A stretch of DNA of 57,686 nt, counting the filler, from Platydemus manokwari (Eukaryota): assembly GCA_037951405.1 (NCBI GenBank). It is 5 parts of 5 records of this genome, joined end to end, with 100 filler letters (N's around TTAATTAATTAA, not from the genome) between each part and the next. Parts side by side here need not be neighbours in the genome. Positions count along the whole stretch, not along the records: positions 48,219 to 57,686 come from JBBMOY011245097.1; 4 more parts are not named here. One strand, written 5' to 3'. Below the pieces are notes generated by a model that had not been told where the DNA came from, did not search any database, and worked only from the letters and a program-made list of their open reading frames with translations. Below, piece after piece: positions 3,601 through 57,686 of the stretch (position 1 is its first letter; each line of letters opens with the position of its first letter). A program made the position numbers and the translations under genes.

Positions 3601-6600
3601 ATTGTAAGGAGTGTAAGCAGTCTACCGAGAGACCGATTTGGTGGTTCTCTCCTCTCAATACGGTGTGATTGGACTTTTATTATACCTTTTTATAATCCAC
3701 ACGGTAACGGATTCGAATATTTAGGGAATTAACTTCGCACTTACATACCTTCATGTAACTGTTGTGTTATCTTTGGAAAAAGTCCCAAATGGGTTCTGAT
3801 AATCGGCAAGGAAAAGATTGAAATGATATTTTAAATATATTATGAAAACAAAGCCTGGTTATGCCAGAAATTATTAATAACCACGTATCCAGGGTTTTAT
3901 TATCCATTGAAGAAAATGTGTTTTGTGAGATTTGTACTTTTCATTCATATTCATCTGTATGGGTTGAATAGGAAATGTAAATTATTGGAATTCAGAATGG
4001 TAGAAAATCACTGGTTTATACAGAGGCAATGTAAATGGAGCAGCTCGAATCAGGTCACAATTTTGATTCAGTTCGAAGTAATGTTTCAGAGTATCTTGGA
4101 ATAAATTGACAGTGTGTTTATTCCTAGCAATCGAATTACATAAACCTGAAATATAACTCCAATCTTTAAAATTAGTTAACTAGTTTAACTTAATTTAAGA
4201 AGTAGCCTGCCTTCCAAACAGACAGACTAAGTTTCGACAATCTTATAATTTATCAAAAATTATGATTTAGGATTTCTAGGAAAAATTTAAAGAATTTCGA
4301 TAATAATAAAGAAGGTAAATTAACCCAGATTAACAGCAATCAAAATGCTACACGTAGTTGATCAATTTAGATGAGTTAGACGCAACATTTTTCACAAAAG
4401 AATTTTTTTCGTCAAATTTGAGATTGATCTAGGCAAATGTTGTGAAAAGCGACAGCTACGAATATTATCGACTAAGGTACATTGCGAAGAAGTACATTAT
4501 CGATTAAAGTGAAGTGTATTAGTGCTTGAAACATATTCGTGGAGAAGATGTGTTTGGTGGAAAAGTATATTTTAGTATGAATGGTGAAAGATAAGGTTAT
4601 TGGAAAGAATAAAACTACTTTCAAACTCATTATTTGATTCACCCAGAAAGATTATCAAAAAATTATGATCCAGAAAATTGGAAAAATAACAAGGTTTTTC
4701 AACACATAGACAAAGTATTGATATGAAATTGTGATATTAAATTATTGATAATGGCCGACAAAATTGCTCGCCTAATGCAGCTTAAAAATGATGTTGATCT
4801 GGTATAATATTAATATATTAAGTTGGACACGTTCCTTCCTTTCCTTTGTTTACGTTAGATCATCCACTTGGTTCTTGTGCATCCAAAAATAACGGACAAA
4901 AAAACAATTCGATTCGCATACTAAAGATTTTCGAAGTATTCCAAATTGATCCAAAGAATCCACAGAAAATTTCTGTTTGACAAAATCTTTTATTTAGGAC
5001 ACTGTTATCAGGCTTGCATTTCCTCCAAAGATCTCAATTTTTAGAAATTATCGATAGCCTTTATTCGAATATTTTCCAAAACAAATCAACACGACCTGAA
5101 AATTTATTTTCAAATTGGAGTCACAATGCAACCAAATAAGTATTTTTGGAATTGATAAATACAATACAAGATTATCTTCACAGTTTTGTGATTGTTGAAA
5201 ATAAAGGAATCTTTTAGATGAGTATGTCAGCACATTCGTGAATTTTATTTTGAAGAATAGAAATAAATGGCAGTAATATTTAATTGGGCTGAATTTTTGT
5301 GAAACCACTGAAGTTAATACAATTTGTTTTAATCTAGTGCTATCTTCAATGATTTTATTGATTTTCTTTGGTTTTACTTATTATTTTATTTATTTATTAC
5401 TTATTTATCATTCCAAAATCATCAGTGGCTCCGATGTGAAAACTGTGAACATTTTATGTAGCTAATTAGAGCGAGATTCTTAATATTTAGATTTCAATTC
5501 ATGACTTCAAAAGCTTAACAAATCTGTATCTGAATTAAATAGGTAATTTTATATGGTTGAATTGGCTCTGAATTTTATTTAAAAAGAATGTCGTGATGTG
5601 ATTTTTAACTTATGCAATGTCTGCTTTAAGGTTTGTTACTGAAATAACTTGAACTGAAGTAAAGGCAAGTAGAGAAAATGAATAAACAAAATGACCATGA
5701 AAACTACACGAAATATCGCATGAAGCTTTGCCGTAATTCATAATAAGATTGTGACATAAAGGACAATCAAAGGAACAATTATTCATGGGATTCACATAAA
5801 AGAATTAGCGGAATGCTTGATTTCTACCAAAAGAATAATCTTAATAACCAATCGTTTCGCTTTTGAAAGATCTCAATTTAGTTTTCACGGTATAAGTAAG
5901 ACGTCCACTATTCGAATGAAAGAAATAATGATAAATACAAGCTTAGGACCAAATTTAGAGATCCAACAATTGTTTTTCAAATCTTCAGACGTTTTAGCTA
6001 TGTTCCATTGAAAATTTCATTGATTTTTGAAACAATTAAAAAAACCCACAATTGTCATTCATCAACGTAATTTCTTGGGAAAATTAGATATTTGCAAACC
6101 AGTGGCAAAGTATTCCTAAATCGAGATATGTCTGGTTTTTTAATCTATCTAATACATAATTTAGTATTTTCTTTCTACCTAATTGATTCAATGAATATCG
6201 TTTTGATGTGGCTTTTGAACTCTTCAGTTGATTCTTATTCGATATTGAATGAATCGATTTCATATTGATAATTATATTTTCAAGACGTAACAGACTCCAA
6301 AATTGGACTGCATATGAACCGTTTCCAATTTCATTATCGATACCACAATGCTGTTTACGATAGTTGTGTGGAATATTGTTTACAATAGCAGATTTGTTTT
6401 TTATTTTTCACTCCCAAATTTTGGTTTTTGTTTAAAATCGAGTGATGATTTTGAAATTAGAACGAAAAAGCTATTTCTATTAAAAGGCTTTAAAATAGAT
6501 TTCGATATGGAAATATATATAAGCTTGTTGGGTTACTTTTGATATGGTCTTTCAATCGATATAAAATCAAACATCATGATAAACTCACAAAAACCAAAAT

Positions 6601-7539
6601 TAATACCAAAACACTAAAATCAATAAAAAAAATAAAAAAAAAATATTTAAACAATTCACTGTGATTCTTTGTTGTGGAACTCTATTAAGATTTTCATTCC
6701 ATGAAATCTGAGAAGTCGACATAAACAATCAACATATGACTTCATCAAGGTACGCCTATTTTGGGATAATGTGAAATTTACCTCACACGATAGTCACGTA
6801 TGAATCGTCGTTTCGAATGGACATTGCTTAAATTTTCACCTCTTCGATTTGCCTTCATCAAACAATCAATAACAGCAAACTAATAACAGAAAACAACAAC
6901 AAAACAGATAAACATTCTTTTTATTTTGTATACAAATAGATCGGATTAACGATAAGCATAACGAACGTTAAAATAACATTAACATCTACATAGTAAATCT
7001 AAATCGGTACTTATATATTTATTTATTTTTCTCAATCTTCCAAGATCAGATCGGCTGACAACAATCCGTAAAATATCCATCAAAATATAAGTTCAAAACG
7101 ATATCGATTTTATATATTTTCATTTTTGTCACTGGTTTTTTGTTTGTTTATCTAATAAATCTCGAAATCTCATTTCATTATTTATATCAATCTTGATCCA
7201 ATAATAAAGATTATTCCATTTCATTTGGGTTTTTGTACGAAAATATATAATAACGTGATTCGATCGATAATATGAAATAAAAACCAATATGGATGTCCAG
7301 CATCAAAATTAAAATTCAAAACACTTTTTGTGACAAATCCACAATGTGACGGCCGTACAATACAAGCCAAAATAGTCAGTATTAAATATTTGAATCTACG
7401 ACATCTGTATACATGATCTGAGAGATAATAATAGTAATAATAATAATAATCGTAACCATAATTATAATATTAATAATAATGACAGTATCGAATTTGACTT
7501 GAAAACGATAAAAGTCATTTTTTTTCGAAAAATCTGTGA

Positions 7540-7731
7540 CTATTTGCCTATTGATGATGTCGAGAGACGCCTGGTCTGCACTGCAGGATGAGGCAATTCC
7601 GATGCAATCGAACTATATAGTTTGTACCAGCCAAACACAATAGATGAAAAGTCAAGGTCATCGAGGAGAATTTCACAGCGACCCATAAACGACTTTTTAT
7701 CCATTCTACTGTATTCTCCCCAAACTGTAGC
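7540..7731 (-). CDS. RIMS: Terminal exon of RIM/UNC-10 (Rab3-interacting molecule): C-terminal half of the C2B domain
   Basis: Acceptor tttgtttattAG, then phase-0 ATVWGEYSRMDKKSFMGRCEILLDDLDFSSIVFGWYKLYSSIASELPHPAVQTRRLSTSSIGK*. This matches the RIM C2B end (V.VWGDYGRMD.K.FMG...I.L..LDLS..V.GW.KLF and the downstream TRR.S.SS motif). The ORF track shows a different frame. Upstream exons were not found in this contig. Confidence 0.9.
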   Translation of the reverse strand, partial: ATVWGEYSRMDKKSFMGRCEILLDDLDFSSIVFGWYKLYSSIASELPHPAVQTRRLSTSSIGK

Positions 7732-7951
7732 CTAATAAACAAACACAATAGAAACCCATTAAACAATATCATTAAATGAGCTGTAAATGTATGATATTTA
7801 TCAAAATACTTTTTAAAATTATTATATATTTAGGAAAACATTAAATAATCTAAAAATCAAATTAATGTAAAAGTATGAAATATATTTCATTTATTCGATA
7901 ATAATAAAATAAATAATAATTAAGGGTGTCATTTTTGCCATTAAAAATGGA

Positions 7952-8560
7952 GGCTTAAGTTAAAAAATAAGGTCCGAAAATGAAATTTTTAATTTGTTGA
8001 ATGTATTGCAAAATTCTATATAGTTTATTTAATAATGTTCTTCAAAAACATTTTTAATTTTTTATTTAAGTATTTAAGAAGAGTTTTAGTATTTTGAAAT
8101 AAAATATTAAATAGACTAGAGCCTAAAAATCTTCTAAAATTTGATTGTTTGAAAAAATGAAAAAAATAAATCGAATTGCAATTTATTGAAAATTTGCGAA
8201 GACCTGTTTTTTAACATTGGAAATAAATTGAGAGATATTCTCAATTTTTACAATTATTTTATAAAAATAACCAATGATATCATTAAACATGTCTGTAATT
8301 AACTAACTCGATTTATAATTATAAAAATTTAAATTTAAAAACTCAAATAATAATATAGAAGTTCTGTGATTGGAATGGGAACTTGGTTTTATAACTATGC
8401 TTTGTCACCACTAGACATCTTAAAAAATGAGATATAAACTGAATTATACGAATAAATTAAACATAGCAGTTATATATATAGTTAAGTAATAAATTTGCCT
8501 GATGCGCGAAAATCCATTATAACGAAAGTAGGTCAAAGGACCCTTTTCTTAACTTAAACC
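7952..8560 (+). mobile_element. ~600-bp non-autonomous DNA transposon (MITE), copy 1
   Basis: ~23-bp imperfect terminal inverted repeats: GGCTTAAGTTAAAAAATAAGGTCC ... GGACCCTTTTCTTAACTTAAACC. The body aligns by eye with 29999-30597 and, reverse-complemented, with 46686-47288. No ORF. Confidence 0.85.
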
Positions 8561-10503
8561 ACATTATTATTAATTTTCGTTGGGAGCATTGTGAGAATAT
8601 TAAATCTTTCAAGATTTAATTTTATATTAAATTATATTAATGTGTTTAAGTAACTATTTAAAATCATAAATTGGTGTCTTGTTTTTGCAGTTAGTTTTTC
8701 ATGCGTGTTTTATAAAATAGTACTGACTTACAAAGATAGCCTAGATAAATCCCATAGAACCAGTTCCAGCTGATAAATACCATTGAACCTGAATATATAT
8801 CATCTTGGTTTGAAATTCAATAATAAATAATACGAAAACCTTGTTAATACAGCAGTTCTCGAGTTCATCTGAGTTTCAAATTTTCCCTAGCAAAAACCAG
8901 GTCAATGCATATTTTAAAATTTTATGTGAAGTCAATTTAACGAATTCACTTGTTGGATTAAAGCACAACAGTGTGACAGATTGAGAATTTTGTCCCTATT
9001 AATAAATTATTGATCGAAAACCCAATGGATTTAATTGAATGTATACAGTCCGTTACAAATACACATCTTATTATGGTCATCATAAAATCAAACGATAACA
9101 TAAACCATCATTGTTTAGAAACGTTTAATAGGTTTTCCAAAATCAGATTTCCATTCATGGATTTTTGCAATTATTTTCTCGCAATATAAAAAAAAATCTG
9201 GAATTATTTCCTGGTGCATTTGTCGATAATTGTAGGTTATATATTTACTTCACTATAATTACAATGTCCATTACAAAGATAATTGTTTGCTTCGTATCTA
9301 CGTGAGATGCTTAATTATAGACGTTGGCATCAATGTGTGGCTAATGTGCAGGAATAAATAATGTGAGATAATTGTCAACAAATATATCTACCAAATATCA
9401 ATCCTGATCTGAAATTAGCATATTATAAAAAAACTTATTCTTATGGAAAGATATTTCATAATATAATCAGACACATTGATAGGTTGTCATTTCCAGGCTA
9501 GCGTCATCTATTAACAGAGTGATTTCTGGCAAATATCCTATTAAGATCGACAATAAAAAATATCAATGAAGCGCTTAGAAATTTTTCAGGCTGATATTTA
9601 TTTCTTATGTTATTGTTTTATTCTCAAATATTTCTTTGTATTTTAATGAAAAATATATTTATCATTGTTTTTTTATTTGTGTTTCATTTCGTTACTTTTT
9701 TCTATACTTGATGTACAGGCAGTAATTAATGGTTTATGCAATATAATGCGCTTGATTTACGATAAAATGTGTTTCAATCAAAAATAATCTTTTAACCAAT
9801 AAATTTGGCCACAATTGTTTCGTGTTTAGTGTCGAATGAAAATGAGTAATGTGAGGTTTATTTAAAAATACGATAAAATTATTGATAAATTGAGCCAAAA
9901 GATATTTTTTAAAAAATTATATTAAAAATTAATATAGCATATTAATGTTTATAAAAGGATCTTGCTTGAAAAATGCTGTCAAACTCTCAGTTTTGAAATT
10001 ATTAAACGTAAAATGTAAACCTTTTTTAAAAAATAATATCCAATATCAAATGCGGATTAAAAATGAAGACAAATCAGGTGGAAATAAATTTAAAATTTGT
10101 TTGAAAAGTGATGTATTATTTTTTGTTCTACTTCAAAAATGACTTTTGATTTGACAATCAATACTGAAAACATGTTGCCAACTAACAAGAGAAATGACCA
10201 AAGATATAAATCAATACATAATCGAATTGTGAAGATGTGGCTGCAAAGTACTACATGTCTACTGATGAGTTGAAAGAACTACAAAATCTATTTTTCGACG
10301 AGGTATTTTAAATATTCAATAAAATAATACCACAATCAATGGTATCGATAATATAAAAATATAAAGCAGATATTATTCGAGGTTGATATGGATTTAATAG
10401 ATAAAAACAGGTTGTTACAAGTTTTCGAAATAGCCTCTAAATTCAAATATGAAATTAATTGATTTATTATATTAAAAAACAATTTAAAATTCCCATAATC
10501 AAT

Positions 10504-10603
10504 NNNNNNNNNNNNNNNNNNNNNNNNNNNNNNNNNNNNNNNNNNNNTTAATTAATTAANNNNNNNNNNNNNNNNNNNNNNNNNNNNNNNNNNNNNNNNN
10601 NNN
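10504..10603. other. Artificial contig-joining linker (N44-TTAATTAATTAA-N44)
   Basis: 100-bp spacer with a palindromic 12-mer that gives stops in all six frames. The same structure occurs at four sites. Confidence 0.95.
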
Positions 10604-10670
<67 letters not shown>

Positions 10671-10680
10671 CATTATCATT
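10604..10680. repeat. (TTA)n microsatellite at contig edge
   Basis: Pure TTA run of about 22 units that decays into TCA variants. Confidence 0.95.
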
Positions 10681-12001
10681 TATATTATTGTGTCTTTCTG
10701 GTGTATAGGGTAACAAATACTCGTGTGTTCTAACTTTTTGATTATTTATCACAACCTGTCTGAAATAATTCTTCATTAATATTTTAAAAAAGTTTTAACT
10801 GTTCTATTGTATTTTGTTCTTTCGTTTTACAGATTTCAACCTTTCTCGTATATATTTATATATGTATATTCTAAAATCCACCTCCAAAGTGTTAACCTTT
10901 TCAAATCCCTTGATAAAGATAATACTTATGTCTGATTATCTCTATCATTAATACATTTATCTATTGTGCTCACATAAATCCATTTAAAAATTTCATAAGT
11001 TAATGGTCCATTAATTGACCTTCATTGGCATTAATTTATATAGGCTAGTTCCTTTCGAAATAATCAGCAAAGCGAAGAGATTCTTAGGAAATCTTGAATT
11101 TATTTTCTAGTATTCCTTGTTTTATGTAATTATTTATAAAAGTTTCTATTGAATCTGCTAATGTACAAAAATATTATGCTTAGTATCAAACTTTGTAATC
11201 CCATAATGTTTTACTAGAATCATTTATTAGAGAAAGGGAATTTACCTTTTCGATGGAAATTATACAGTCAAATAGATAAATTCCTTTAGAATAAATATCA
11301 GAAAATTCAGTGTTTAAATTTACAAGCACCCCTTTCATTGATTTACATAGTCCGACTAAAGCATTTTGAGATAATCCTAATAAATATCAAAATCTTAATA
11401 AAATACCATTAAAGGAAATATATTTCTTTAGATAACGGAAATATTTTTACTTCCTTATTTGTATTTCACGAGTCTATTTCTTTGACAATTAAACAGGAAT
11501 CACATTCTGATCCATTGGAGGTAATATTAAGGAATATCTTTTGGTTTTTTGGTTAAAATATTTACATGGTTTGCAAGCGGCTCTTCGATAATACTGTTCT
11601 TTCAAATAGTCACGGTAATTATTATTTACAATAAATACACGAGTTGAATTATTTAAAATTATTTAATTCTTTTTATAAATATTTTATTTTCAAAATTACT
11701 TAAATCGGTTTGGGTTTATGTTATTGTTGCATTTTGTTGATTTTACTGTTATTGATTTTGATTGGTGTTTGCTGTTTTGCTGTGTTTTTTAGGATATTTG
11801 TGATTATCATTTTATATAATGTAGCTATAATTAATTGATTCGATGTTGATAAATTTATTAATGAATCGATTATTTTAAATTATGTAATAACGATTGATTT
11901 AATATATTATCAAATATTTTATATAATAATATCAATTCAATCCAATCAATCAATTCAATCATTATATTTCAAATCAAAGATATTCATTATAATCAATTAT
12001 T

Positions 12002-12406
12002 TTAACCACATTTGCTAATTATTTTCAAAGATACAGTCGTGTAATTCAAAATATTTTCCAATTTGGATTTGAGCAAAATTCGAAATGATTTTGTTTCGCC
12101 TTGTGGTCGAGGACCATTGCAATCTTTAACTTCAATCCAAGATGGAGGATCAAAACATGGATCGATTATCATTTGATATATTGCTGAAGACTTGTTATTG
12201 GTGATGACTTTAATCTCTTGTCGTGAAACATTCATTACTACAGTGCCGTTGAGTGTGAAATTGTTTTGATTTAAATTCTCTTCAACATTATCCATTATCA
12301 TTGGCCATGACATGCTCTCAATACATTCTTGTGATTCTGGTAACGCATATGGTTTGGACATTCCATATGAGATGATGGTGAATAATAAAATGTATAAAAT
12401 TGTCAT
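12002..12406 (-). CDS. Intronless secreted 134-aa glycoprotein, possibly ML (MD-2/NPC2/GM2A-like lipid-recognition) domain
   Basis: Longest ORF in the window, ATG to TAA. It has a hydrophobic N-terminus MTILYILLFTIISYG (signal-peptide-like), 4 Cys and five N-x-S/T sequons. The segment IIDPC-x11-C-xxP-xx-GET recalls the ML-domain D-x-C...CP...GE motif. Family assignment is inference. Confidence 0.65.
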   Translation of the reverse strand: MTILYILLFTIISYGMSKPYALPESQECIESMSWPMIMDNVEENLNQNNFTLNGTVVMNVSRQEIKVITNNKSSAIYQMIIDPCFDPPSWIEVKDCNGPRPQGETKSFRILLKSKLENILNYTTVSLKIISKCG

Positions 12407-12959
12407 TATTATTATTATTGATATCGTTAAAGATGTGGAATGAGAGGAGAATAAGCATTTATACGAATAAAATTTCTACAAAAATAGCAATTATATGAAT
12501 AATGCGACTACTGCTAAATTTGTGAGTAAATGAATTTGGAAGTTGTTGATAATGATCGTTCAATCCAATAATAAATCTGGAAATCAATTCGCCAAATATT
12601 ACAAGATAACTCATGTGATGTTGGCATTGATATGTAAACAATTGGTTGAGATTATATTAAACGCAATCTTGACAAAACATTCTATTAATTATTGACAACA
12701 TTTGTTTTAGTTATTTAATGCTAATATCTTGTAGAACTAATTTTGGGATAATCTTTCAACTTGAACTCGAAACTGAAGCCATGTTAATCTAATAGCACTT
12801 CCATTACTTATTAGATAAATATATATAATCTTATATTTCGTTTATTAATATTATTGATATTGTAATTGAAGTAAAAAAAGATATTTTAATAGAATTATCT
12901 CTCTTAATCAAGAGGTCAATTTCATGGAGAACTGACAATTTCCCTTATTCTGTAGTCTC

Positions 12960-13520
12960 TGACTTCAGAATTTCATCTTTTTCTTTGGGGTGCCAAGAAT
13001 ATTTTTGATCTGATTTTGTTTGCGATGTTGTTTTCGATATGCTTTGGCCATGAGCCAATTAAAATTAGAAAATAATCCAGAATAGAGATTGATTCGGAAT
13101 TTGAAAAGATACTTGTAGGACTGAGATGTATGAAAAAGCCTTTTAAGCACCACAAGATGAACGTATACCACGGTTCCCAGTCCTTATCAAACTATTTTTA
13201 ATAATGATCTACACCAGCAGCTATATGAGCAGTGCTGGGCAACGAATATCCAATGGCACAAGTCAGCTGAGGACTAAAAACTCTGGAGAAAATCTACGCT
13301 GTAATAGAACTCGAAGCACAGTCTATGCTCTCAAAAAGTTCAGATCTCATATATTTGGACAGAGAATCATGTACTAACCGAGCACAGATTAATGGATCTT
13401 ACAACACAAGGATAAAGCATCAAGGCTTATCCTATAGGCATTCAAACCTCAACAATATAATATCAAAATATGTTATCCTAAAGGCAAAAATAATGCAGAC
13501 TCATTATACCGAGCCATACT
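12960..13520 (+). mobile_element. Degenerate Ty3/Gypsy LTR retrotransposon pol fragment (RT connection and RNase H)
   Basis: Frameshifted motifs TEMYEKAF, YAVIELEA, VYALKKFRSHIFGQR, WILQHKDKASRL and QQYNIKICYPKGKNNADSLYRA match the Gypsy RNase H consensus (ELEA.A..AL.KFR.YL.G...; Y.F.I.YR.GK.N..ADALSR). Confidence 0.85.
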
Positions 13521-16500
13521 AGAAGGGTATGAAATTGAAGCAATCAATATTGGACAAAATATCAACTACGTAATTCATTGTAATTTTTCCATGGTCCATT
13601 ATTAAATTATTTTTTATATATTTCTATTTATTTCATTAAAATTATATTTATTATAATCATCTGTGAAGATTGTTAGTGTTTGCTTAAAGTTGTTCAAAAA
13701 ATTATTGGGGATAGAAAGATGAATTTAACATTCCTACTAGGGGTTCACACAAAGACGTATAGGCCTGAAATGATCTTCAAGAATAGCTAATACTTTATAT
13801 GGCTGGTGAAAACAAAAATTTATCAATATTTGGAAGAGGATGATTCTTATATGATTTATTGTGTTGAATTCGAATAATGTTTATAAATTTCCAGTCATGT
13901 TGATGTAGAGGAAACATCTGAGAAGGATGATTTAAAAGTCTTTGTACTTTTGTTTGGCATACAACTTAGTTTTACAAAATTCTAACTTTTTCTTTGAGTA
14001 AGATAATAGAGATACGAAATCACTATCAAGTAAAATAGTCACTTTTAAACAACGCAAATGCCTTTAATAAACGATGCCTTCAAAACACGATATCGATATT
14101 TTACAGTTATTTAAACAATATAAGAGTGATCGACAGACTATTCGATTAATTTCGAGGTTAATTAATATTAATTCTATGATATCAAATAAATATTTAGTTT
14201 CTACTTAAATGGTTTCTGTGCCTTTGCAAAAAATTTGAAAATTCTTTATAAATCATTCAACCATATCTTACAGGCACAATCTCCAAACAATACACAACAA
14301 TATTAGTATTTTAAGGAATATTTGCTGAATGAGAAATTATTTTATTTCTTTTTTTATGTTTTCTGAATTAATCAGGTGTATATTTATACTCTGATTTCTG
14401 TTCTATATAGCTTTGAAACTGTTAAATGATTTCATTTTATGTATTTAGCCGATTTCCCCACGTGATCATCAAAATTAACCAAAACAATCAGTTTTTTTTA
14501 ATAAAATGGAAATTTTTTCCTCAATTATTTTATTTAATTTATTATGTATCATATAAGTTCTTATCAATTATTATTAAACTTCATTTTTACTAAATTTTTC
14601 TCATTAATTTTAACTCTAACAGACATTTATCACCACTGTTTTTGGCATTGGCCTCATTTGTTCCTCAAATCAAACGTGACCAATGTGAATATCCGAATGG
14701 AATATGCTTGTACCCGTCGCATAATTTTTGTGCAAAGTGTATGTGAAGTAAAAGTATGTTTTTTAATGTTAGGAATACAGTCTCTTACATACTCTTAATG
14801 GCCTTTACTCCATTGTCTATCTGATTAACTCCTAAACTTGTTTTCAACACCTCATATGTTGATGAATCGATATTGATATTTCTTACAGAACTAATAAACC
14901 GTGCCAATCCCTCTAATTAAACTTTGCCTTCAACACACGAGAAATAAATTTAAACGTGGTAATATAACTTTTATATACAGAAAAAATGTTTTAATTATCA
15001 ACCTAACCCACTCAAATAATTAATTAATACAAGCATAGGACTCAGTGATTTAATTACTGAAATACTGAGTAACGATTGAGTGATTATTGTAACATTGCAG
15101 TTAAACTATTCCACTGGACTTGATCTCTCACTGAAACATTTCTTAAAATGTTGGAAATTATTTCTGAAACAGGTTCAGCATGTATGAACATATTTTGGTG
15201 ATTTTTATTCTTCAAAATTTAGTTGAAATTATCCACGTTATGCGTTTGAAAATTTAATGGAAGTCCTTCACCTTTTCTTTTCTCGACCATGCGTTTATAC
15301 AGAGAATTTTTAAATTTATATTTTGAAATACCATCTTGACTTCTAGTTTTTAAATAGTTTTCAAATTTGTATTTATTCAACAATATTTTGTTCGCATTTT
15401 CACCGTTTGAAATATGATGGGTAATGTGATTGTTTTGTTAAAAACCTTGAACTTACATCTATTTCTTAAATTTAATTAATCTTCTCATTTGATGTCTAAT
15501 GTGATATCTCTTCTGATTTTAATAATGTATTTGATGTTCTTGTGGTCAAGGAAATCGGTTCTAATTCTGATTCCAAATTTCTTATTATGCATCTTTGGCT
15601 CTTTTATTAATATTGTTCCTTTTTATCCGACTAAGATTGTAGCAATGACTAGTGTCAAACATGTATTAGATCACAATTAAGCCACTATGATCAAATGATT
15701 TCTGTATAATTCTTAGCATTGGGTTAATATTGTATCTTTTTAACACATTATTCACCATAAGCATAATACTCATATTAGTCTTTATATTAGTTATGTTGGG
15801 TATATTGCAAATCAGTCAAAATGGTCCCAAGAACCAGGGAAAAACCCTAAAAAAGATCAATACATACAAACCAGTTAAACACACATGATGTTAACCAATC
15901 AGATTTGTTATAATGTAAATTCATATTTAGAAACTAAGAATCGACAGGCACATGCCTACAAACGGCAGCAAACTCAAATATCCTCAAATAAATCGATCCA
16001 CAAACAAATTCGGCGAATTGAAAACGAAGATCCGCGACATCAAGCAGATACACCCGATGGATCTACAAAAGAGGTTGAATTCCATAGATTCTTTCGAGTC
16101 TTTTTTGGTCAGCAACTTCAGTGCTTAGCTTATGTTTGATTTCAGTAATCAGTCTTTTTGATTTCTCTTCATTTTGTTAGTGACTTTCAGATGCTGATCT
16201 CATCTTGAATGATTTTCTTTGTGAACTGCGTAGGGATTTGTTATTGTTATTATTGAGACTTTGAGTGTATTATGTTAGTTAGATTCAAACTGTTGTTAAT
16301 AACGCAACAGTTATTGTGCTGCTTATTTTCTCAAGAATTACAACGGTAGATAGGTTGTTCATTCTAATTTTACTTTCTTGGTAATATAAAAATAATGAGA
16401 TAATTTTTAGATTTTATCCATAAATCATTTAAATAACAATTGGGTTGTTTGATGAAGGTTTAATTTTTTGAGAAAAATTAAAAATTTTCAAATAAATCAA

Positions 16501-48218: not shown

Positions 48219-48353
48219 AATACTTTATTTAAAAGTTATTAGCACGATTGATGGAAATTCAAAGATATATAGGATCTTATAAATTAACTTTCTAGTTACT
48301 GCTTTTGTTTAAATAATAATACTATTATAAGTAAAGTTTTTAAATATATTAAA

Positions 48354-50280
48354 ATGTCAACTGAATATGCTCAAGTTGTAAAACAAATCTTTACAAAAAG
48401 TAGTCGATTAAGAGATCAGCGAATTTATAATAATAAAGTGCACTCACTTGGATGGAGTGCAGATGGTTCAAAATTAGGAACAGGCTCTTCGGATAGAGCG
48501 ATTAACATATTCTATTTAGATAATTACAGCCTTGTAATATTATTTATTCATTTTTTTCATAAATAAGTATTAAGACAAAAGGGTCAACAATTCGTGGCCA
48601 TAGTAATGCCGTTGATCAACTACGTTGGCATCCAACTGACTCCCATATATTTAGTACAACTGGAGCTGATGGTTCTGTCAGATTATGGGATACTCGAACT
48701 TCTAACAAGTCCATTGGCTTAATGCAAGGCAAAGGAGAAAATATTAATTTAGCTTGGTCACCAGACGGAAATACTCTGGCTGTGGGTAATAAAGAAGATC
48801 TGGTATTAGATTAAAATATCAGAATCCATTATTTCAGTTATAGGTTTCTTGGTTAGATGTGCGCAAAGGCTTAGAAGCAATCCACGTCGAACAGTTTAAA
48901 TGTGAAATTAATGAATTTTCCTGGAATAACGATGGGGACTATTTTGTTCTTACTACCGGATTGGGAACTCTTTATTTTTACAGGTAAAGTAAATGAACAG
49001 CATTGTCATAAATTTAAGCTATTTAGCTTTCCAAATTTGAAGCGAGAATATACTTTGAAGGCACACGCAGTCAATGTTATTTGTTTACAATTTGATCCAA
49101 CCGGAAAATATTTTGCAGTTGGATCAGCTGATGCAGTCGTTTCAGTGTGGGATATTTCTGAAACAGCTTGTATTGGAACTTTGTCGAGGTTATTATTTAT
49201 ATTTGTTTTCTTTTATTCAAGTTAATAATTTAATTTTAAATTAATTTATTAATTAATATGATTTTCTAAACTGTCTAAATCATCGGACAAAATTTCTTAT
49301 TGTACATTGAAAAATTCTTAATTTAAATAATATTTTTTTTAATAAAATTATTGAATGTTTATAAATTATATAAAGCTTGTTGGAAATGTATAAGCTTTGA
49401 TTAAATATTTGTTATCCTCAAACCGAATTTATTTAAAAATAATTTATTTCTCAATTAATTAAAATCAAATTAAACATGTTTTATAAAAAATTCTTCGTTC
49501 ACAATAAGGATTCATCCCTAATTGCTTAAAATTTATAGCTACAAATAATAAGAGATAAAAAAGTACTTTCTGACATTGAAAAACATTTTTACACGTTTAA
49601 GATATTTATTGTTTCTTTCTGGATTCGTTAAAAATCATTTCTCAAAAAATAAATTTGAGAGAAAAATTTTCTTAAAAAAATCTTCCCAAAATAGATTTTT
49701 ATCATTGTGAAATATCTTAATTTATTTCTCTGTCTGTCATTCGATACCGATTAGAAATTTCTTAGTTACAAATCGATTTTTATCCATATCTTACAGAATG
49801 ATTTTGATTGGTCAAATTTTATCACATAAATTGATGTGTTGTTTCAGTGGATACTTTTAAAATTTTTTCTCAAAAAAACTCATTTTTATTTTTTTTAATG
49901 AGTGCTTGGATTCGAATTCGAGTGGCTCTGTGTTCGTATTTCACTGTTAAAAAGATTGAAAAAAATTGTCTTCTTCCAGACTTGAGTGGCCTTTGAGAAC
50001 CGTTGGGTTTTCATGTGATGGTCGAATGATTGCATCTGGAAGTGAGGATCATTTCATCGATATTGCAGAAGTCGAAACGGGAAATCAAATCTATAAACTC
50101 AATACAAATTCAGCCGCTTTCACATTGGCTTGGCATCCAAAAGAATATCTGCTCGCATTCTCTAGCGACGATAAGACCAATGAGAGAGATCGAGATCAAG
50201 GCTCGGTCAAGATGTTTGGAGTCAATCAGTCGACAGATAGCCTTCTGCCAGCAGCATTTAAATTCGATGTTCCTCTTTAA
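48354..50280 (+). CDS. THOC3: THO complex subunit 3 (TEX1 homolog, WD40), complete, 336 aa; exons 48354-48533, 48575-48802, 48844-48983, 49027-49188, 49980-50280
   Basis: All introns are GT-AG (41, 41, 43 and 791 bp) and in phase, giving a 1011-nt CDS. THOC3 signatures: KVHSLGWSADG, RGHSNAVDQLRWHP, KGENINLAWSPDGNTLAVGNKED, AHAVNVICLQFDPTGKYFAVGSADAVVSVWD, SRLEWPLRTVGFSCDGRMIASGSEDHFIDIAEVETG, FTLAWHPKEYLLAF. Confidence 0.97.
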
Positions 50281-53167
50281 ATTAAATAAATGAATTCCTC
50301 GTCTTAAATTATTATTTTATTATCGTCCAATAATTAAATTATTATTTTAATTTTTCCTAATTCAAGTTGACTTCTGCTAAATGATCGCAGATCGTAAGAT
50401 TCTTCGAGCTTTTTAACTGTTTTTATCGAGCATTTTTTGAGCTCAACACCAATAAGGAAGTCCTAAAAATTTAAAATTTTGTGGCGGGTAAATTTTTGTC
50501 GTAGTTTTCCATATCTAGATGATTTGAAATGTTATTTTTGTTTTACTTTATTAATATTTGTAGAAATAATTTTTCAAACGTTTTTCACAAATGCAACACA
50601 ATTTTTTTCAAATTGTCCAGCTAAAAACAAAAAATGTTGTATTTGGTTGCATTTTAATGTTGAGAAACCGGCATACACGGCCATGGGAAATAATCTTTTA
50701 TTGAAACGAAATGAAATAGTATTGTCGGTCGCTAGATAAATTAATGTCTAGTTTTAATGCATACATCATTTCAGTAATTAAATACGAAACTTTGAAGGAG
50801 ATATGGCGAAGTTTGGTTTGGTTTAATAAATGTGACGAAGCTAATATTGGGTTCTTGTAACCAATCATTTGCTCAACAGAGTAAATTCATGTTAGTTTTG
50901 CTGAAGACTTATTAAAACAAGATCTATACACTATAACTTCTATTATTAATGTACGATTAATAGCTACCAATTTCAATATGAACAACAACCTTTATAGCCC
51001 ATAATCTATTTTCGAAATATCAAAATCAACCTCAATTAAATGCAAAAAATTATTTACTTTCAAACCCAAACAATTTTAAACTGAAGAATTTACTAAATTT
51101 AGCCCACATTTGAAAATAAAAAATAGAAACAAGGCTATCATTTATTGCCCCAAAAGTGAACCTTTGAATAATTTTAGATTTATATAATTTACTTTCGGAT
51201 GTCAATTTAGTCGTTTCCTACCAAATGAATTTGACTCCAGAAATCCACAAATATCGATATTGTTAAAACGGTGCAATAATTTGGATTAACCGACAAATAA
51301 TAGTAATTTTTACTTTGTGTCGTATTTTACTTGGAATATTGAATTTCTTATTTCAATGTAAAATTTTGTCGATTATATATTTATGAATACTAATTCTTTG
51401 GGAAATTAATTATAAAGATAAATAACGCCATTGAATTAACCAGTGCAGTAAAATCATACATTAATAAATTCCCAATAGAAATAGAATTTCTCCAAAAATT
51501 AATAATTTATTGACATTTAAAATAAACAGGTTGACTTTAAATCACATTGAAAGCTCGAGTGCAGGAAGATCAGAGCGAACTAAAATTAAATACGTAGAAG
51601 TTTGTGGATGTTCCCTGCCAATGACTCACTCAACCATTTATTATATAATCATTGATAGAGAGTGTCAGTTCTGTTGCGGTTTAGAGTCTATAGTATGTTT
51701 ATTTAGTATGTCTATATATGTATATGTGAGTTCGATACTACCGGTTGAAGTGCAATGTCTAACCGGTAGGTGCGCGCCCTTAAGATTATAATATAATAAT
51801 ACACTAAATAAATACAACAATGATGACAATAAAATGTATTTTCTGTTATAACAATTTACAAATATTAAAGTTTTTGAACTCTACTACAAATATGATAAAA
51901 TCCCTTTAAAATTTTAAACAAAATTATTCATCCAATCAAACAAAATTTCAGATTGTTTAGAACACGCAGATTACGAAAATGTGTTCAGCAAGGGAAGGCT
52001 CAGATAGCAAACCTCCTTTACGTAGATATATGATTTTAAATTATTATATATTATATTTACTCAAATCACACCTTCTATATTTATTTTTATCGACGTTTGC
52101 ACCTTTTACAGAGTTCTTTTTAAAATAGTTTAGTCCTTTTAAGATCGTCTAGTAATTTTTGTGAGTGTGAAATTTGTGATTTTGGCTTTCCTTATATAGT
52201 ATTTTCTAGGACGGATTCTGAGTAATCGTTTTTGATTATTATTTTCTTTTTCCCTATTGGATATTAAAATTATTTTACAAATTAAAAATTTTAATTTATT
52301 TTTCACCCTTATTATTCACAATCTTTTTCTTTTTCTACTACATTTAAAATTCCAATTTTCGCATACTATTATTTATGGAAATTATTTTATTTTTTATTAT
52401 CTTGTTCAAAAATTATTTTCTTTTTACTTCATGGTTTTGTTATTATTATTATTCCTCGTAATAGTTTTTTTATATATAATTTGAAAATATAATTATATAA
52501 TTATTTTTATGTCCAACATATAATTTTCGTGGTTTCATAATTTTCATTGTTTTATATACAATTTTCAAAATTTCTTTACATATCAATAAGTCATGCAAGA
52601 TTAAAAGAGTCAGATTAATCACAAAAAATAAGATATAGTCAAATAATTACTAAAAGTAAAATATAGGCCAATATTTGTCACTTATCTATGTCTACCTTCC
52701 ATCTGGATTGTAGGCTTTGATAAGAGAGGGTTGATTGAGACTACTGGGGCTAGACCTTCTGATATGCTGAAGATAAAGGTGATAAAAATGATATTGTTGA
52801 GCTTGAGCTTGATTTCATTCTGTAACAGTACTAGTTATTTTGGAAGTCAAAATTCAGTGATTCGTTAGTTGCGGAGAGCCCATGTGTTTAGTATATTGCC
52901 AATGTGCTCACAGAAGTAATGAAGTAATTGAAGTAATTTTCTTTGCTATAAAATATTATTTAAAAATATATATTTCTTATATTTTCAACGTCCTTGTGGA
53001 AAATTCATCACCGATACTACCAAGGAGAGATGAATCCAATACTTTTTCTTTGAAGTTGTAATCCTAGGTTGAGAGCCTAAAATAAAATTTGTATTTCCTG
53101 TGTGGTTATAATATACTTTATTATTAATTTACCTTGGTTTTCAGTTCATGTACGTTTTGTTGTTAAA

Positions 53168-54290
53168 TATGAAACGTTTTGGGGTCACTCTCTTTTGGTT
53201 TATTATTTATTTGTTTTAATTGAATCGATTTCACGACTTAATCAGTGTTCTGAGTCCGTTATCGACCCTCAGGTAGCAGTTATGTTTTTAATTATTTGTT
53301 CGCCTCGACGATCACTTCTTATATGACGATAAGTGGATCGGCGTAGAAATCGATATTTGTATTTTAACTTTATCTTTTTGATCTTAATACTACTTTCATC
53401 ACTCGGTCCTCACTCGTTTAATCAGTCTCTATTTTATTCTCTCAATAAAATTATTCCCAAATAGGTGATGAATGATACTGATATTCACTATATGAATTTA
53501 TGATACCTTATATCAAATAACAATTCAACAAGTCAACTCGATTTTTGGTTATGAATTTTTATTGTGATTACAATTATACATCAAGTACTACTTTTATACA
53601 ATTATGGAGCTATAAATTACTACTTTTACTATGCAATTATTACAATGAATACAATATACAATGGGTTTAAATGCTACTTATATACACTCAAACGCTGGAC
53701 TAATTCGATGTGCAAATGAAATGGAAGCAGATGTTGGACAAAACAGTTACCCTTCGTGCTATTGGGTCAGTGTCCGTTTCTTCAGAGTTTTTCCGAGCTC
53801 GGCTCGATAAATAGGAAGAGTATGCGAGATAGATAAGGATATATTGATTTTACAGTAACTATTCTTACTTGATCTTGTCCCCAGATGAGTAGTATTATTA
53901 AATACTCTTCCTATAAAATTATAGGGCATAAGCTGGAACTACAGCTGCAGAGAGATTGACGGCTTTGACGGCGATAATTAACTTCGAGTCTTCTCAACAC
54001 ACTATTCTAGTGGTTTCTTCTAAACGGGTTAGTGGTTTCGGTATAATAGGGCAAAGGCGTATGATGTTTTACTGCCTTATATATGTTTTGGTGAACAATT
54101 GGATTTTATTCGGGCTGAATAAAATATGCGGGTGGCTTTTATTCTTTATTGTGACAAATTCTCACAATTCAAAATAATTTTCTCTCTGCCTGAGTTACCG
54201 TGCGAGTTTTATTGTTGGGTATCATTTTAATATACGGGTAATTTTTGGAAAAATAGGGGTTTTAAAGATTAGATTTTTTAGTCGTTAGGC
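53168..54290. repeat. ~1.1-kb structured non-coding element, copy 1 (candidate ncRNA or solo LTR)
   Basis: Colinear homology blocks with 55134-56290 and 57480-57686, many conserved hairpins, and no conserved ORF. Boundaries are approximate. Confidence 0.75.
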
Positions 54291-55133
54291 AGAAAATGAA
54301 AATAATTAACTTATTTTCATTTTAATTAATTCCATTTTATCTAAATTTTAACCAAAATTAACTAAATTTTTATCCTAAATTATTATCATATTAAAATATG
54401 ATAAAATATTTAACTGTAATTATTATTATTATCCAAAATACTTAATATTTTAACTAAAACATTCAATATTCTAATTTAAGACAGATTTTCTTAACTATTT
54501 CTTATTTTTAACTTCAACTAAATATTATTATTTTTAAACGACTAAAAACTTCCAATTAATTAAGGGTTTAAGACTATTCTGCTTCGAAGAATAATCAACG
54601 AGATAAAAAGATAAGATAATATTTGCATATCAGAATTATTTACAATATCCATAAAAAATAATACTTATATACACCAAAATCAATATCAATCAAATGTTTT
54701 TCAGGAGTCATTTTCTCGAAAGCCCAATAAATACAAAGGGAATCTACTTTAAAATATCAAGTTTTTAAATCTTAAATAACATAACAAACATTTTACTGTC
54801 GAGATAAAATTAGTTCTTGATCGATTGCGGAAAATGTTTACAATATTTTGTCTAAGGCGTTTGCGTAAAATATTGATAAAATTCACAGAAATATCAAACT
54901 AAGTTTTTCAATAATAAAAAATTACTTACAATGCCAAATTTTGTAATTGCAACCTTCGTTTCCTTGCTTAACTTGGTGATACAGCGATAATTGTTATAAT
55001 CTTCCCATTTGATAACATGATTTTTATCCCTCATTGTAGTTCAATGACTTAGAGTCATTGTTTCTCAAACACCAGTGGGAGTTTTACAATCTCATGAAAA
55101 CTAAAATTAATAATATTATTATCATTATTATTA

Positions 55134-56290
55134 TTGTTCGATTTTGGAGTTGGAGTTTTTTGAGATATTTTATTTCGTTTTTATTTTGATTTTTGATTAT
55201 GTAACATCAGAATCTTATCAGTCTCTCGGAGTTCTCAAAAACCTCAGATATAAAATAAACCCTTTGTTTCCTTATGATCTTTCTTCGCCTTGATCGTATC
55301 AATCTTCATATGAAGACGGGATGATCGGCTTAATGATATTGCTTTTGATTTTATCAGTCTCTTATTTTTATTATTTAAACGCCTCTTTACACCCTTTTAA
55401 AAAAGAATAAGTTGACAATGAAATGATTTTTATTAAACTAATGAAATGACACTTGCCAAATCTAAAAGTCAACTCGGTTATGTTGACTAAAACTTTTATT
55501 GCTAATAAATTACAACTAAAAATGTCTACTTTGATACAATTATATGAATTACTACAACTATGTTTAAATATAACAATACTTTTATACACTACAACGACAA
55601 GGGTTTAGCACAATTCTGGACAAAGCTCCGGTTAACAATGCTCACAAGAGGAGTAGAATTGTTTATACAAGGACTTTGGGTTTAACCCTATAAATAGGAA
55701 GAATATACGACGTTGATGTTGTAAATATGTCAATGAACTTATAGAAATTATCTTACTCGATCCTTGGTCTTCTCCTCGAACAAATTGATTATGAATTATC
55801 AAAATTGATTCTCCAGATAAATCTGGGCATATACTGGTAGCAAGGAAATTGACTTCGGCTTGGTCGGCTTCGGCAAAGGAATACTTCGAATTTTTGATAA
55901 CAAGCACACTACGATAGTGGTTTCTGTCTATTTCTCTGGCAAGGCCTATTGGTTTTAAGGGCCTATTTATACGGGATTTTATTGATGGCAAATTTTGATT
56001 AAAATGCGTGCTCTTTTCATTTTAATCCGAATGAATATCTTTTGACTGCGGGTTGTCAGCGCATTATACGGGTGGATTTTTGATATCCTTTATTATTTAA
56101 TAAAAGGAATTTATTTTATTCAGAGGTTTATTTCTTGTTGCCAGCTGAATTCATTTATTTAAAAATAAGGGTAATTTATTTTAATGCGGATGATTTTAAT
56201 ATCAGGGTATTTTTTATAAGGGCTAAATTTTGGTTGTTGGGTGAAATATTTTCGGGTTATTATTATTTTTAGGATTAATTATAAACGGTT
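55134..56290. repeat. ~1.1-kb structured non-coding element, copy 2 (more diverged)
   Basis: Shares with copy 1, in order: CTTATCAGT..GAGT..CCTCAG, TTCGCCT..GATC..ATATGA..GATCGGC, ATCAGTCTCT, TACTTTxATACAATTAT, TGGACAAA, ATAAATAGGAAGAxTAT, TCTTACTxGATC, CACACTAxxxTAGTGGTTT, and a GGG-motif tail. Confidence 0.7.
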
Positions 56291-57479
56291 CTAATTTATG
56301 ATTTTATTTTTATTTACAAAATCATTTATTATATTTCATTTTTACGAATTATATTTGTTAACCTTTGTCCAGAATCAAAGATAAAAAATAAAGAAAAAAA
56401 TATAATTGGTAACAAAATTCATACTTTGATACACTTATTACCATAAAATATTACAATAAAAGTTTCATGCACACAATTTGAATATTCCAAAACCCCAACA
56501 TTATTATTAAATATTTTATGATGAACTTTCTTATTTTTAATGAACTTTCAAATAACATAATTCAAAATATTAGCACAGCAGGATCGTGAAAACGTTTTTT
56601 AGAAGTATGTGATCACAAAAAACAATAATTTATTCCATCTGTTTTAAATTACATTATTTTTTGTTTACTCTTCTAATAGTCTCTCATTTCTAAAAATGTA
56701 ATAACCTCTAAGAGAAAATTAACAAAATGCTGCTATGTGGTTTCATATATATATATATATTTCATTCTTCGACACAATCAAGAGATTTGTAGAAACATTA
56801 TATCGATCTAACAATAAATTCTAAAAAAATCAACTACCTCAGGATTTGTTGATTTATTCTTCATTCATTTTCCGTTTTTAAAACATAAGCAACATTTAAT
56901 CGACACAAAAGTATTTTAATTAGTAAAACGGTTCAACAAATCATTTAACAGATTATTATGAAAAACTATCTCAAGTTAATTTAAACAAATAATTTACCAA
57001 ATCACCAATTAAGTACACCCAATAAGTCGCTGTCAGGGTCATCAAATTAACAATTAACATGAATTCCATTCGAAAACAATGAAGAAAATACACTCCAAGT
57101 TTGAGATATAAAATGTATATAATATGTAGAAATGCGAAATATTTTTAAATGCTTTAGAAAATTTAATGTTATAAATATCTATTAATCATAATGAATAAAC
57201 AATTCTGAAAATATTTTATAACTGACAAATTAAAATCATTTTAGTTCTCATTTGGTCAAATATGACTCAACCATAAGAAAACTTTCATAATAAAATATAA
57301 ATAATTATTCTAGATTCAGAAAATAAAATCCATTGGAAATTTTGTTCTACTAGGTTCTGTGTATTCAAGAGATTCTTTGTTCGTAAAGACTTTCAATATT
57401 TCAATTGTAACTCTTCGAATATTGTAAATTTACCATAATCCAATTTTAGTAGACCTGGATTTAGAGAACTATTTATACT

Positions 57480-57686
57480 TGTGATGCGTTTTGGGGTCAC
57501 TCTCTTTTCTTGTTATTATTTGTTTGTTTTAATTGATTGAATCGATTATACGACTTAATCAGTGCTTTGAGTCCGTTATTGACCCTCAGGTGGCAGTGAA
57601 ACCTTATACTTATTGATGTTCTTTCGCCTCGACGATCACTTCTTATATGACGATAAGTGGATCGGCGTAGTAATCGATTTTGATAT
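57480..57686. repeat. Structured non-coding element, copy 3 (cut by the window end)
   Basis: Closely matches 53168-53360: CGTTTTGGGGTCACTCTCTTTT and the identical CGCCTCGACGATCACTTCTTATATGACGATAAGTGGATCGGCGTAG. It begins with TGTG. Confidence 0.85.

What the first reader, a model, noticed from the sequence alone, without database searches (positions are those of the whole stretch)
53168..57686. Head-to-tail array of a ~1.1-kb hairpin-rich non-coding element with compensatory base changes
Seen: three same-orientation copies start at ~53168, ~55134 and 57480 (period ~2.0-2.3 kb), separated by AT-rich spacers with no obvious similarity. Copies 1 and 2 are heavily diverged with many indels, yet stems persist. 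CCTATA-AAAT-TATAGG (53910-53925) becomes CCAGAT-AA-ATCTGG (55813-55826), with several compensatory pairs. CACTA-TTC-TAGTG (54000-54012) becomes CACTA-CGA-TAGTG (55907-55919), changing only the loop. AAGGC..GCCTT (54054-54078) becomes AGGCC..GGCCT (55942-55964). CTGAGTC..GACCCTCAG (53250-53272) becomes GGAGTT..AACCTCAG (55228-55247). I recognise no rRNA, snRNA, tRNA, SL RNA or ribozyme core. Inference: selection on RNA structure, meaning either an undescribed clustered long structured ncRNA family or a cluster of solo LTRs/TRIM units with an unusually structured R/U5 region.
Basis: partly seen in the sequence, partly recalled or inferred. Interest (0 to 1): 0.8.

Follow-up and report, generated by a model that had tools for sequence, protein, structure and literature searches.

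The report
Three copies of a high-copy repeat
The three "hairpin-rich units" are real. They are copies of a repeat present roughly hundreds of times in this genome, most likely solo LTRs of a retrotransposon, so this is ordinary repeat DNA and not a special structured-RNA gene cluster.

Summary
Three same-orientation copies start at 53168, 55132 and 57480, and the spacers between them are unrelated. Copies 1 and 3 are 84% identical. Copy 2 matches only in collinear islands and is about 55% identical overall.

The decisive result comes from the one public DNA run that holds this genome. Contigs at least 80% alike pile up to a summed depth of 4,000-16,000 on copy 1, 900-2,700 on copy 2 and 12,600 on copy 3. 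The spacers reach only 15-29. The unit is therefore a dispersed repeat with roughly hundreds of copies and a continuum of divergence. It is not a local gene array.

"Hairpin-rich" is not supported:
- Fold energies equal those of shuffles.
- Stem density is no higher than in the surrounding DNA.
- Rfam and ARAGORN find nothing.

Only one stem (53909-53925 / 55812-55827) shows real compensatory changes. A second (CACTAnnnTAGTG) has invariant arms.

Several features fit solo LTRs: a TG start, a probable CA end, an AAATA/AAATA duplication around copy 1, a conserved TATA-like box, and no coding, inverted termini, PBS or PPT. The class is inferred. No full-length element, RNA data or repeat library was available. 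Interest is low.

The parts
53168..54447 (+). Copy 1 of the repeat, about 1.28 kb. The 5' end is firm. The 3' end is inferred at ...TCCA and could lie up to about 54470.
   Evidence: 84% identity to copy 3 from 53170; a unique contig covers 52785-53204, and summed depth is 4,400-16,000 from bin 53140 to bin 54469, then 677. The 5-mer AAATA at 53165-53169 recurs at 54448-54452 if the element runs 53170-54447 (read).
55132..56374 (+). Copy 2, a diverged subfamily member of about 1.24 kb. The 3' end is inferred at ...GTCCA. Faint similarity to copy 1 continues to about 56460.
   Evidence: Collinear blocks with copy 1. Summed depth is 900-2,700 between 55230 and 56179, 496 in the next bin and 61 after 56370.
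57480..57686 (+). Copy 3: only the first 207 nt, cut by the end of the piece. It is closer to the family consensus than copy 1.
   Evidence: E 5e-49 against copy 1; a unique contig covers 56364-57509, and summed depth is 12,600 in bin 57510-57686.
53806..53828 (+). Conserved TATA-like box and flank, (T/G)ATAAATAGGAAGArTATrCGA. The counterpart in copy 2 is at 55689-55711. It is the best conserved and deepest-covered part of the unit, and a putative promoter.
   Evidence: Family D13 and alignments. The depth peak of 16,057 falls in bin 53710-53899, and 53820 G>A occurs in nearly all other copies, matching copy 2.
53303..53345 (+). Imperfect long palindrome/hairpin H1 (CGCC..GATC...GATC..GGCG). 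Counterparts are at 55287-55329 and 57627-57669. The outer arms are conserved and the inner stem differs in copy 2.
   Evidence: -11.1, -15.9 and -11.9 kcal/mol, with z -0.7, -2.8 and -0.7. Co-located stems are listed.
53909..53925 (+). Hairpin H2, (U)CCUAUA-AAAU-UAUAGG(G). The counterpart at 55812-55827 is (U)CCAGA-UAAA-UCUGG(G). It has three compensatory double changes and sits directly before the conserved GGGCATA.
   Evidence: (z -4.3 and -3.5).
54000..54012 (+). Palindrome H3, CACTA-nnn-TAGTG, inside a conserved 22-nt block. The counterpart is at 55907-55919. Only the three central bases differ, so there is no covariation.
   Evidence: z -2.6 and -2.8.
54555..54680 (+). Possible rearranged fragment of the same family inside spacer 1. 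AAGGGTTTAAGACTATTCTG resembles 55599-55618, and AATAATACTTATATACAC resembles 53672-53689 and 55572-55589.
   Evidence: Short matches (E 0.02-0.2, weak). Summed depth is about 650 at 54470-54849.

Best explanation
The three units are copies of a high-copy, non-coding interspersed repeat of this AT-rich, probably animal, genome. Copies 1 and 3 belong to one subfamily and copy 2 to a diverged one.

The most likely class is solo LTRs of an LTR retrotransposon. Each would be about 1.25 kb, running 5'-TG...CA-3', with a TATA-type promoter about 640 bp in. Sequence upstream of that box would be U3 and sequence downstream R/U5.

The islands conserved between subfamilies include the 5' terminal TG(T)GATGCGTTTTGGGG, the TATA box and flank, direct CGGC repeats and two or three palindromes. 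On this reading they are the element's own cis-acting sites: integrase end, promoter and enhancer, and possibly leader RNA stems. Purifying selection on active copies kept them before the copies landed here. They do not reflect selection on a host RNA gene at this locus.

Shown: repeat status, copy boundaries at the 5' end, absence of coding capacity, and absence of known RNA families. Inferred: LTR class, 3' ends, orientation of transcription and the role of the palindromes.
For: -: 4,075 contigs of the only DNA run lie on the stretch at 80% identity or more. By identity class they number 465 (>=99%), 850 (95-99%), 1,464 (90-95%) and 1,296 (<90%).
- summed depth is 4,400-16,000 on copy 1, 900-2,700 on copy 2 and 12,600 on copy 3. 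Bins 52950-53139, 54850-55039 and 56560-57129 reach only 15-29, and the locus's own unique contigs have depth 10-17.
- at many positions nearly all other copies carry a letter different from the window copy (for example 53248 T>C and 53820 G>A). This is what decayed copies of a consensus look like.
- joints show internal-deletion variants and mosaics between copy-1-like and copy-2-like forms.
- all three copies start with T(G/A)TG-like TG ends.
- AAATA flanks 53170-54447 on both sides.
- the TATA-like block is conserved.
- no conserved ORF, no Pfam hit and no protein relatives.
- no terminal inverted repeats.
- the spacers are unrelated to each other.
- no known RNA family and no tRNA.
Against: - No full-length element with gag-pol between two such units was seen. 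No genome, Dfam or Repbase search was possible.
- The 3' ends are inferred from 190-bp depth bins and a weak alignment.
- The AAATA duplication has roughly a 2-3% chance of arising at random in this AT-rich DNA, given the candidate ends tried. Copy 2 shows no duplication; an (ATT)10 microsatellite abuts its start.
- Three same-orientation copies within 4.5 kb is denser than random insertion would give.
- The summed contig depth is, by the tool's own warning, not a copy number.
- Co-located stems are in modest excess: 6 against 2.05 +/- 1.21 in slid controls, with 0 of 110 controls reaching 6. Some selection on palindromes or hairpins therefore cannot be excluded.
Confidence: 0.62

Rival explanations
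1. It is a transposable element of another class. Candidates are a non-autonomous Helitron-like or other DNA element, or a retroelement-derived dispersed unit prone to local tandem duplication. Rolling-circle or recombination-based amplification would explain the same-orientation clustering with captured unique DNA between copies.
For: High copy number and variants. Same orientation of three copies plus a possible fragment. Palindromes are common in Helitron-like elements. The LTR class is not proven.
Against: The 5' end is TG(T)G..., not TC. No CTRR end with an adjacent hairpin was recognised. There are no inverted termini. There is no 3' poly(A) or 3'-biased depth as expected for SINE/LINE; depth is highest at the 5' end and at the TATA block. 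No head-to-tail junction of about 1.3 kb appears among the best-supported joints.
Confidence: 0.2
2. It is a massively amplified family of TATA-driven non-coding RNA genes, or of pseudogene-like retro-copies of one. The conserved stems downstream of the box would then be RNA structure under selection.
For: A conserved TATA-like block is followed by conserved islands. H2 has three compensatory pairs. Co-located stems are in excess over slid controls.
Against: There is no Rfam hit at E<=1. Long-range fold energies equal those of shuffles. Sliding consensus folds average z of about 0 on the + strand. Stem density is not above background. H3 and the outer arms of H1 are sequence-conserved palindromes, which fit protein-binding DNA sites equally well. 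The conserved part extends 640 bp upstream of the box to a sharp TG terminus, as in a mobile element. No RNA data exist.
Confidence: 0.1
3. It is a locus-specific tandem duplication: an ancient 2-kb unit duplicated in place and maintained by selection as a host regulatory or lncRNA array.
For: Regular 2.0-2.3-kb spacing and shared orientation. Conservation is island-like against 55% background identity.
Against:: the unit is present at roughly hundreds of times single-copy depth, with many copies more than 90% alike, while the spacers are single copy. Copies 1 and 3 are closer to the genome-wide consensus than to each other's flanks. The spacers share nothing.
Confidence: 0.03

Closest known systems
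Solo LTRs of LTR retrotransposons (Ty3/Gypsy, BEL/Pao, Ty1/Copia)
   Same: It is non-coding and 1.2-1.3 kb long. It has a TG start and a probable CA end, and a possible 5-bp target duplication (copy 1). It carries an internal TATA-type promoter block and conserved terminal bases. Copy number is high, with subfamilies and deletion variants. No PBS or PPT lies beside the copies.
   Different: No full-length parent element, PBS, PPT, gag or pol was seen. The superfamily is unknown. A target duplication appears at only one copy. Three copies sit within 4.5 kb in one orientation.
TRIM / LARD non-autonomous LTR elements, including tandem LTR-internal-LTR arrays
   Same: Direct repeats alternate with non-coding intervals in one orientation.
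   Different: TRIM LTRs are 100-250 bp and the internal region carries a PBS and PPT and is itself repeated. Here the unit is about 1.25 kb, and the two intervals are single-copy, unrelated to each other and lack a PBS or PPT.
Helitron-derived dispersed or tandem repeats (for example DINE-1-like)
   Same: High copy number, non-coding, palindromes, and a tendency to occur in same-orientation clusters.
   Different: The 5' end is TG rather than TC. No CTRR 3' end with a subterminal hairpin was recognised, and insertion into an AT site was not seen.
Clustered small-RNA gene repeats (SL RNA, snRNA, 5S arrays)
   Same: Repeated units with a promoter-like box.
   Different: No Rfam match at E<=1. 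The spacers are unique. The unit is far longer than such genes. No perfect tandem junctions are seen.

Membership tests
Solo LTR of an LTR retrotransposon | 5' terminus TG | tested here: met
   Similarity between copies 1 and 3 starts at TATGAAACG (53168) and TGTGATGCG (57480). Copy 2 has TATTGTTCG (55132). Unique contigs break at 53204 and 57509, 30 nt inside.
Solo LTR of an LTR retrotransposon | 3' terminus CA | tested here: inconclusive
   ...TTATCCA (54447) and ...TTTGTCCA (56374) coincide with the depth drops in 190-bp bins and with a weak alignment. The exact ends are not proven.
Solo LTR of an LTR retrotransposon | Target-site duplication of 4-6 bp | tested here: inconclusive
   Copy 1 has AAATA at 53165-53169 and at 54448-54452 if the element is 53170-54447. 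I estimate the chance of this at random at about 2-3%. Copy 2 shows none; an (ATT)10 repeat abuts its start. Copy 3 is cut.
Solo LTR of an LTR retrotransposon | Dispersed, multi-copy, with diverged subfamilies | tested here: met
   summed depth is 900-16,000 against 15-29 on the flanks. 4,075 contigs span identities from below 90% to above 99%. Dispersal across scaffolds itself was not seen directly.
Solo LTR of an LTR retrotransposon | The same unit occurs as paired LTRs around PBS-gag-pol-PPT | not testable with these tools
   No access to the rest of the genome. Word search with an element ORF and motif scans of metagenome, genome and viral collections found nothing related.
Solo LTR of an LTR retrotransposon | Internal promoter (TATA) defining U3/R | tested here: inconclusive
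   A conserved (T/G)ATAAATAGGAAGA block lies at 53806 and 55689. Transcription start is untestable because no RNA run exists.
Structured non-coding RNA gene family | Match to a described RNA family | tested here: not met
   Rfam 15 with permissive filters gives 0 hits at E<=1. ARAGORN gives 0.
Structured non-coding RNA gene family | Folding more stable than shuffled sequence; enriched in stems | tested here: not met
   z-scores are -1.39, -0.57 and +0.83. Stem density is 16.7 and 13.4 per kb against a background of 9.9-24.8 per kb.
Structured non-coding RNA gene family | Covariation supporting a consensus structure | tested here: inconclusive
   Only two full sequences are available. One stem (H2) has three double changes. 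Co-located stems number 6 against 2.05 +/- 1.21. Sliding RNAalifold gives a mean z of 0.03 on the + strand on a poor alignment.
Structured non-coding RNA gene family | Discrete transcript | not testable with these tools
   No RNA run holds the stretch.
TRIM | Short LTRs (about 100-250 bp) around a repeated internal region with PBS and PPT | tested here: not met
   The unit is about 1.25 kb. The intervals are single-copy and unrelated to each other. No PBS-like or PPT-like tracts lie at the junctions.
TIR DNA transposon / MITE | Terminal inverted repeats | tested here: not met
   The best local alignment of the reverse-complemented 5' end against the 3' region scores within the range of shuffled controls.
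Tandem satellite | Head-to-tail units without unique spacers | tested here: not met
   0.7-1.1 kb of single-copy DNA lies between units. No unit-length 'goes back' joint appears among the best-supported joints.

The most novel reading that the evidence does not exclude
The repeat is a mobile, promoter-bearing non-coding element whose leader hairpins (H1, H2) are under selection across subfamilies for its own RNA biology, such as packaging or reverse-transcriptase recognition. The same-orientation pile-up downstream of THOC3 would then be part of a uni-strand small-RNA (piRNA-type) source locus and not a chance cluster.
Probability: 0.08. Interest if true: 0.4.

Novelty: new member of a known kind. 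Interest (0 to 1): 0.12.

Why it matters
It matters little beyond annotation. The result removes a candidate 'new structured lncRNA family' and replaces it with an unclassified interspersed repeat that should be masked.

It is also a caution for the scan. Island-like conservation and a few matching palindromes between diverged copies are expected for subfamilies of a mobile element, and short stems are frequent in 28%-GC DNA. If the LTR reading is confirmed, the conserved blocks mark the promoter and terminal sites of that family.

Tried and rejected
1. Finding the organism and more copies all failed:
- The search of protein representatives with the last THOC3 exon was swamped by multi-repeat WD40 proteins.
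- The look-up of encoding contigs with two ORF guesses found nothing on record.
- The search for homologous proteins with an element ORF and with the THOC3 exon found nothing usable.
- The protein-atlas search gave only generic WD40 clusters.
- Motif scans of metagenome, prokaryote-genome and viral collections gave nothing, or 15 chance 18-mer hits in GC-rich contigs with no further similarity.
- A full-text search for three motifs gave 0 papers.

2. Coding readings were rejected. No ORF has a Pfam match. Six-frame comparison of copies 1 and 2 gave only equal weak hits in two frames at one place, which reflects DNA similarity and not a reading frame.

3. The TIR, TRIM, satellite and known-RNA readings were rejected.

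4. Sliding-window RNAalifold on a MAFFT pairwise alignment is of limited value, because the alignment misplaces short stems by 1-2 columns. I replaced it with an alignment-tolerant count of co-located stems with slid controls.

5. The BLAST of the spacers against the element returned only short AT-rich matches.

Full report
**What is in the piece.** The piece (48219-57686) is 26-39% G+C.
- On the + strand, 48354-50280 holds a five-exon WD40 gene. It has three introns of about 41-42 nt and one of 791 nt.
- Its last exon matches the C-terminus of human THO complex subunit 3 at E 2.6e-35. The source is therefore a eukaryote, probably an animal.
- The species could not be determined.
- The rest of the piece has no convincing coding sequence.

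**The observation.** Self-comparison confirms three units in the same orientation.
- Copy 1 and copy 3 are 83.9% identical over 205 nt (E 5e-49), up to the end of the piece.
- Similarity begins at 53168 and 57480, with TATGAAACG in copy 1 and TGTGATGCG in copy 3.
- Copy 2 (from 55132, TATTGTTCG) is far more diverged. It gives only collinear weak blocks at constant offset: 68.7% over 131 nt (E 1e-8), 61.7% over 253 nt (E 5e-6) and 59% over 297 nt. Identity is 55.5% over aligned columns.
- Conserved islands stand out:
  - the 5' terminus;
  - TAATCAGT...CCTCAG;
  - a long imperfect palindrome, TTCGCCT.GA...TCATATGA.GA...GATCGGC;
  - AAGTCAACTCG;
  - CTACTTT.ATACAATTA;
  - (T/G)ATAAATAGGAAGA.TAT.CGA;
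  - GGGCATA..CTGG;
  - CGGC direct repeats;
  - CACACTAnnnTAGTGGTTTCT;
  - several CGGGT motifs.
- The two spacers share nothing significant.

**The decisive result.** Only one public run, a DNA run kept as Logan contigs, holds the stretch. No RNA run does. I laid its contigs on 52000-57686 at 80% identity or more.
- 4,075 contigs were laid. By identity class they number 465 (>=99%), 850 (95-99%), 1,464 (90-95%) and 1,296 (<90%).

| Region | Summed depth |
|---|---|
| Copy 1 | 4,400-8,300, peaking at 16,057 over the TATA-like block |
| Copy 2 | 900-2,700 |
| Start of copy 3 | 12,600 |
| Bins 52950-53139, 54850-55039, 56560-57129 | 15-29 |
| The locus's own error-free contigs (52785-53204, 54729-55093, 56364-57509) | 10-17 |

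- The tool warns that summed depth is not a copy number. Even so, a contrast of two to three orders of magnitude between unit and spacer shows that the unit is a genome-wide repeat of roughly hundreds of copies and that the spacers are single copy.
- The unique contigs break 30 nt inside the unit at 53204 and 57509. This fixes the 5' boundary to within a few bases.
- At many positions almost all other copies carry another letter than the window copy (for example 53248 T>C and 53820 G>A, the latter restoring the base seen in copy 2). Decayed copies of a consensus look like this.
- Joints show variants with internal deletions and mosaics between copy-1-like and copy-2-like forms. Copies 1 and 2 are therefore members of subfamilies of one repeat.

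**The structure claim.**
- Rfam 15 with permissive filters gives no hit at E<=1 on either strand. ARAGORN finds no tRNA.
- Long stretches fold no better than dinucleotide shuffles, with z of -1.39, -0.57 and +0.83.
- Perfect stems of at least 5 bp occur at 16.7 and 13.4 per kb in copies 1 and 2. The gene and intergenic part has 20.6 per kb and the two spacers 24.8 and 9.9 per kb. The unit is not hairpin-rich.
- Sliding RNAalifold windows average z = 0.03 on the + strand, but the alignment is too poor for that test to count for much.
- An alignment-tolerant count finds 6 stems of copy 1 with a stem of copy 2 centred within 4 columns. Controls with the partner slid by 20-400 columns give 2.05 +/- 1.21, and none of 110 reaches 6. 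This is a modest excess.
- Part of that excess is simply conserved palindromic sequence. H3 (CACTAnnnTAGTG) has invariant arms, and the outer arms of H1 are also conserved.
- One stem shows true compensation. H2 at 53909-53925 versus 55812-55827 has three double changes among six shared pairs, with local z of -4.3 and -3.5.
- By my estimate, one such case among the 11 stems of at least 6 bp in copy 1 is not significant on its own.
The third pair is not at aligned positions.

**What it is.**
- The unit has no conserved reading frame, no Pfam match and no protein relatives. It has no terminal inverted repeats.
- No 3'-biased coverage or poly(A) tail is seen. No head-to-tail junction appears among the best-supported joints.
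- It starts with TG. The depth drops and a weak alignment place the ends at ...TCCA (54447 and 56374).
- If copy 1 is taken as 53170-54447, it is flanked by AAATA on both sides. I estimate about a 2-3% chance of that at random, given the candidate ends considered.
- A TATA-like block about 640 bp from the start is the best conserved and most abundant part. No PBS-like or polypurine tracts adjoin the copies.
- Together this fits solo LTRs of about 1.25 kb from an LTR retrotransposon family, with the conserved islands being the element's own terminal and promoter sites.
- That class is inferred. I could not see a full-length element or query a repeat library. A different class of mobile element remains possible.

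**Why the clustering is not decisive.** Three copies in one orientation have a 1-in-4 chance with respect to orientation alone.
- The neighbourhood is repeat-rich. A very high-copy short repeat lies at 52190-52379, and moderate repeats lie at 52000-52950 and 54470-54849.
- A uni-strand small-RNA source locus is a speculative alternative. It cannot be tested without RNA data.

**Verdict.** The copies are real and homologous. The 'array' is three insertions, or remnants, of a high-copy repeat. The novelty is at most an unclassified repeat family, and interest is low.

Noticed in passing
window 48354-50280 (+): A THOC3 (THO complex subunit 3) orthologue with five exons. It has three very short introns of about 41-42 nt and one of 791 nt. 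The last exon matches human THOC3 residues 265-348 at E 2.6e-35.
   Followed up: partly
window 52190-52379: A different, very high-copy short repeat. Summed depth is 11,153, and at 52222 G>A occurs in about 30,100 of 30,200 depth units across 97 contigs. It may be a MITE- or SINE-like element. The whole 52000-52950 stretch is moderately repeated (300-570).
   Followed up: no
window 51738-51770: A perfect 9-bp stem, CTACCGGTT-(15 nt)-AACCGGTAG, in a locally GC-richer block (51540-51790). It is followed by GGTGCGCGCC. It is not called a tRNA by ARAGORN and has no Rfam hit.
   Followed up: no
window 54470-54849: Spacer 1 is moderately repeated (summed depth about 650). It carries short pieces resembling the central part of the unit, at 54562-54581 and 54656-54679. 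It may be a rearranged fragment of a fourth copy.
   Followed up: partly
window 55106-55135: An (ATT)10 microsatellite directly abuts the 5' end of copy 2. It may hide or have replaced a target-site duplication.
   Followed up: no
window 53960-54260 and 55960-56270: The 3' third of the unit carries 8-12 degenerate copies of a short motif, (A/C)GGGT followed by a T-rich run, at irregular spacing of about 15-50 nt on the G- and T-rich strand. Its role is unknown.
   Followed up: no
window 53909-53925: Hairpin H2 of copy 1 contains a canonical TATAAAA. It could act as a second TATA box about 105 bp after the first. The copy 2 version (AGATAAATC) does not.
   Followed up: no
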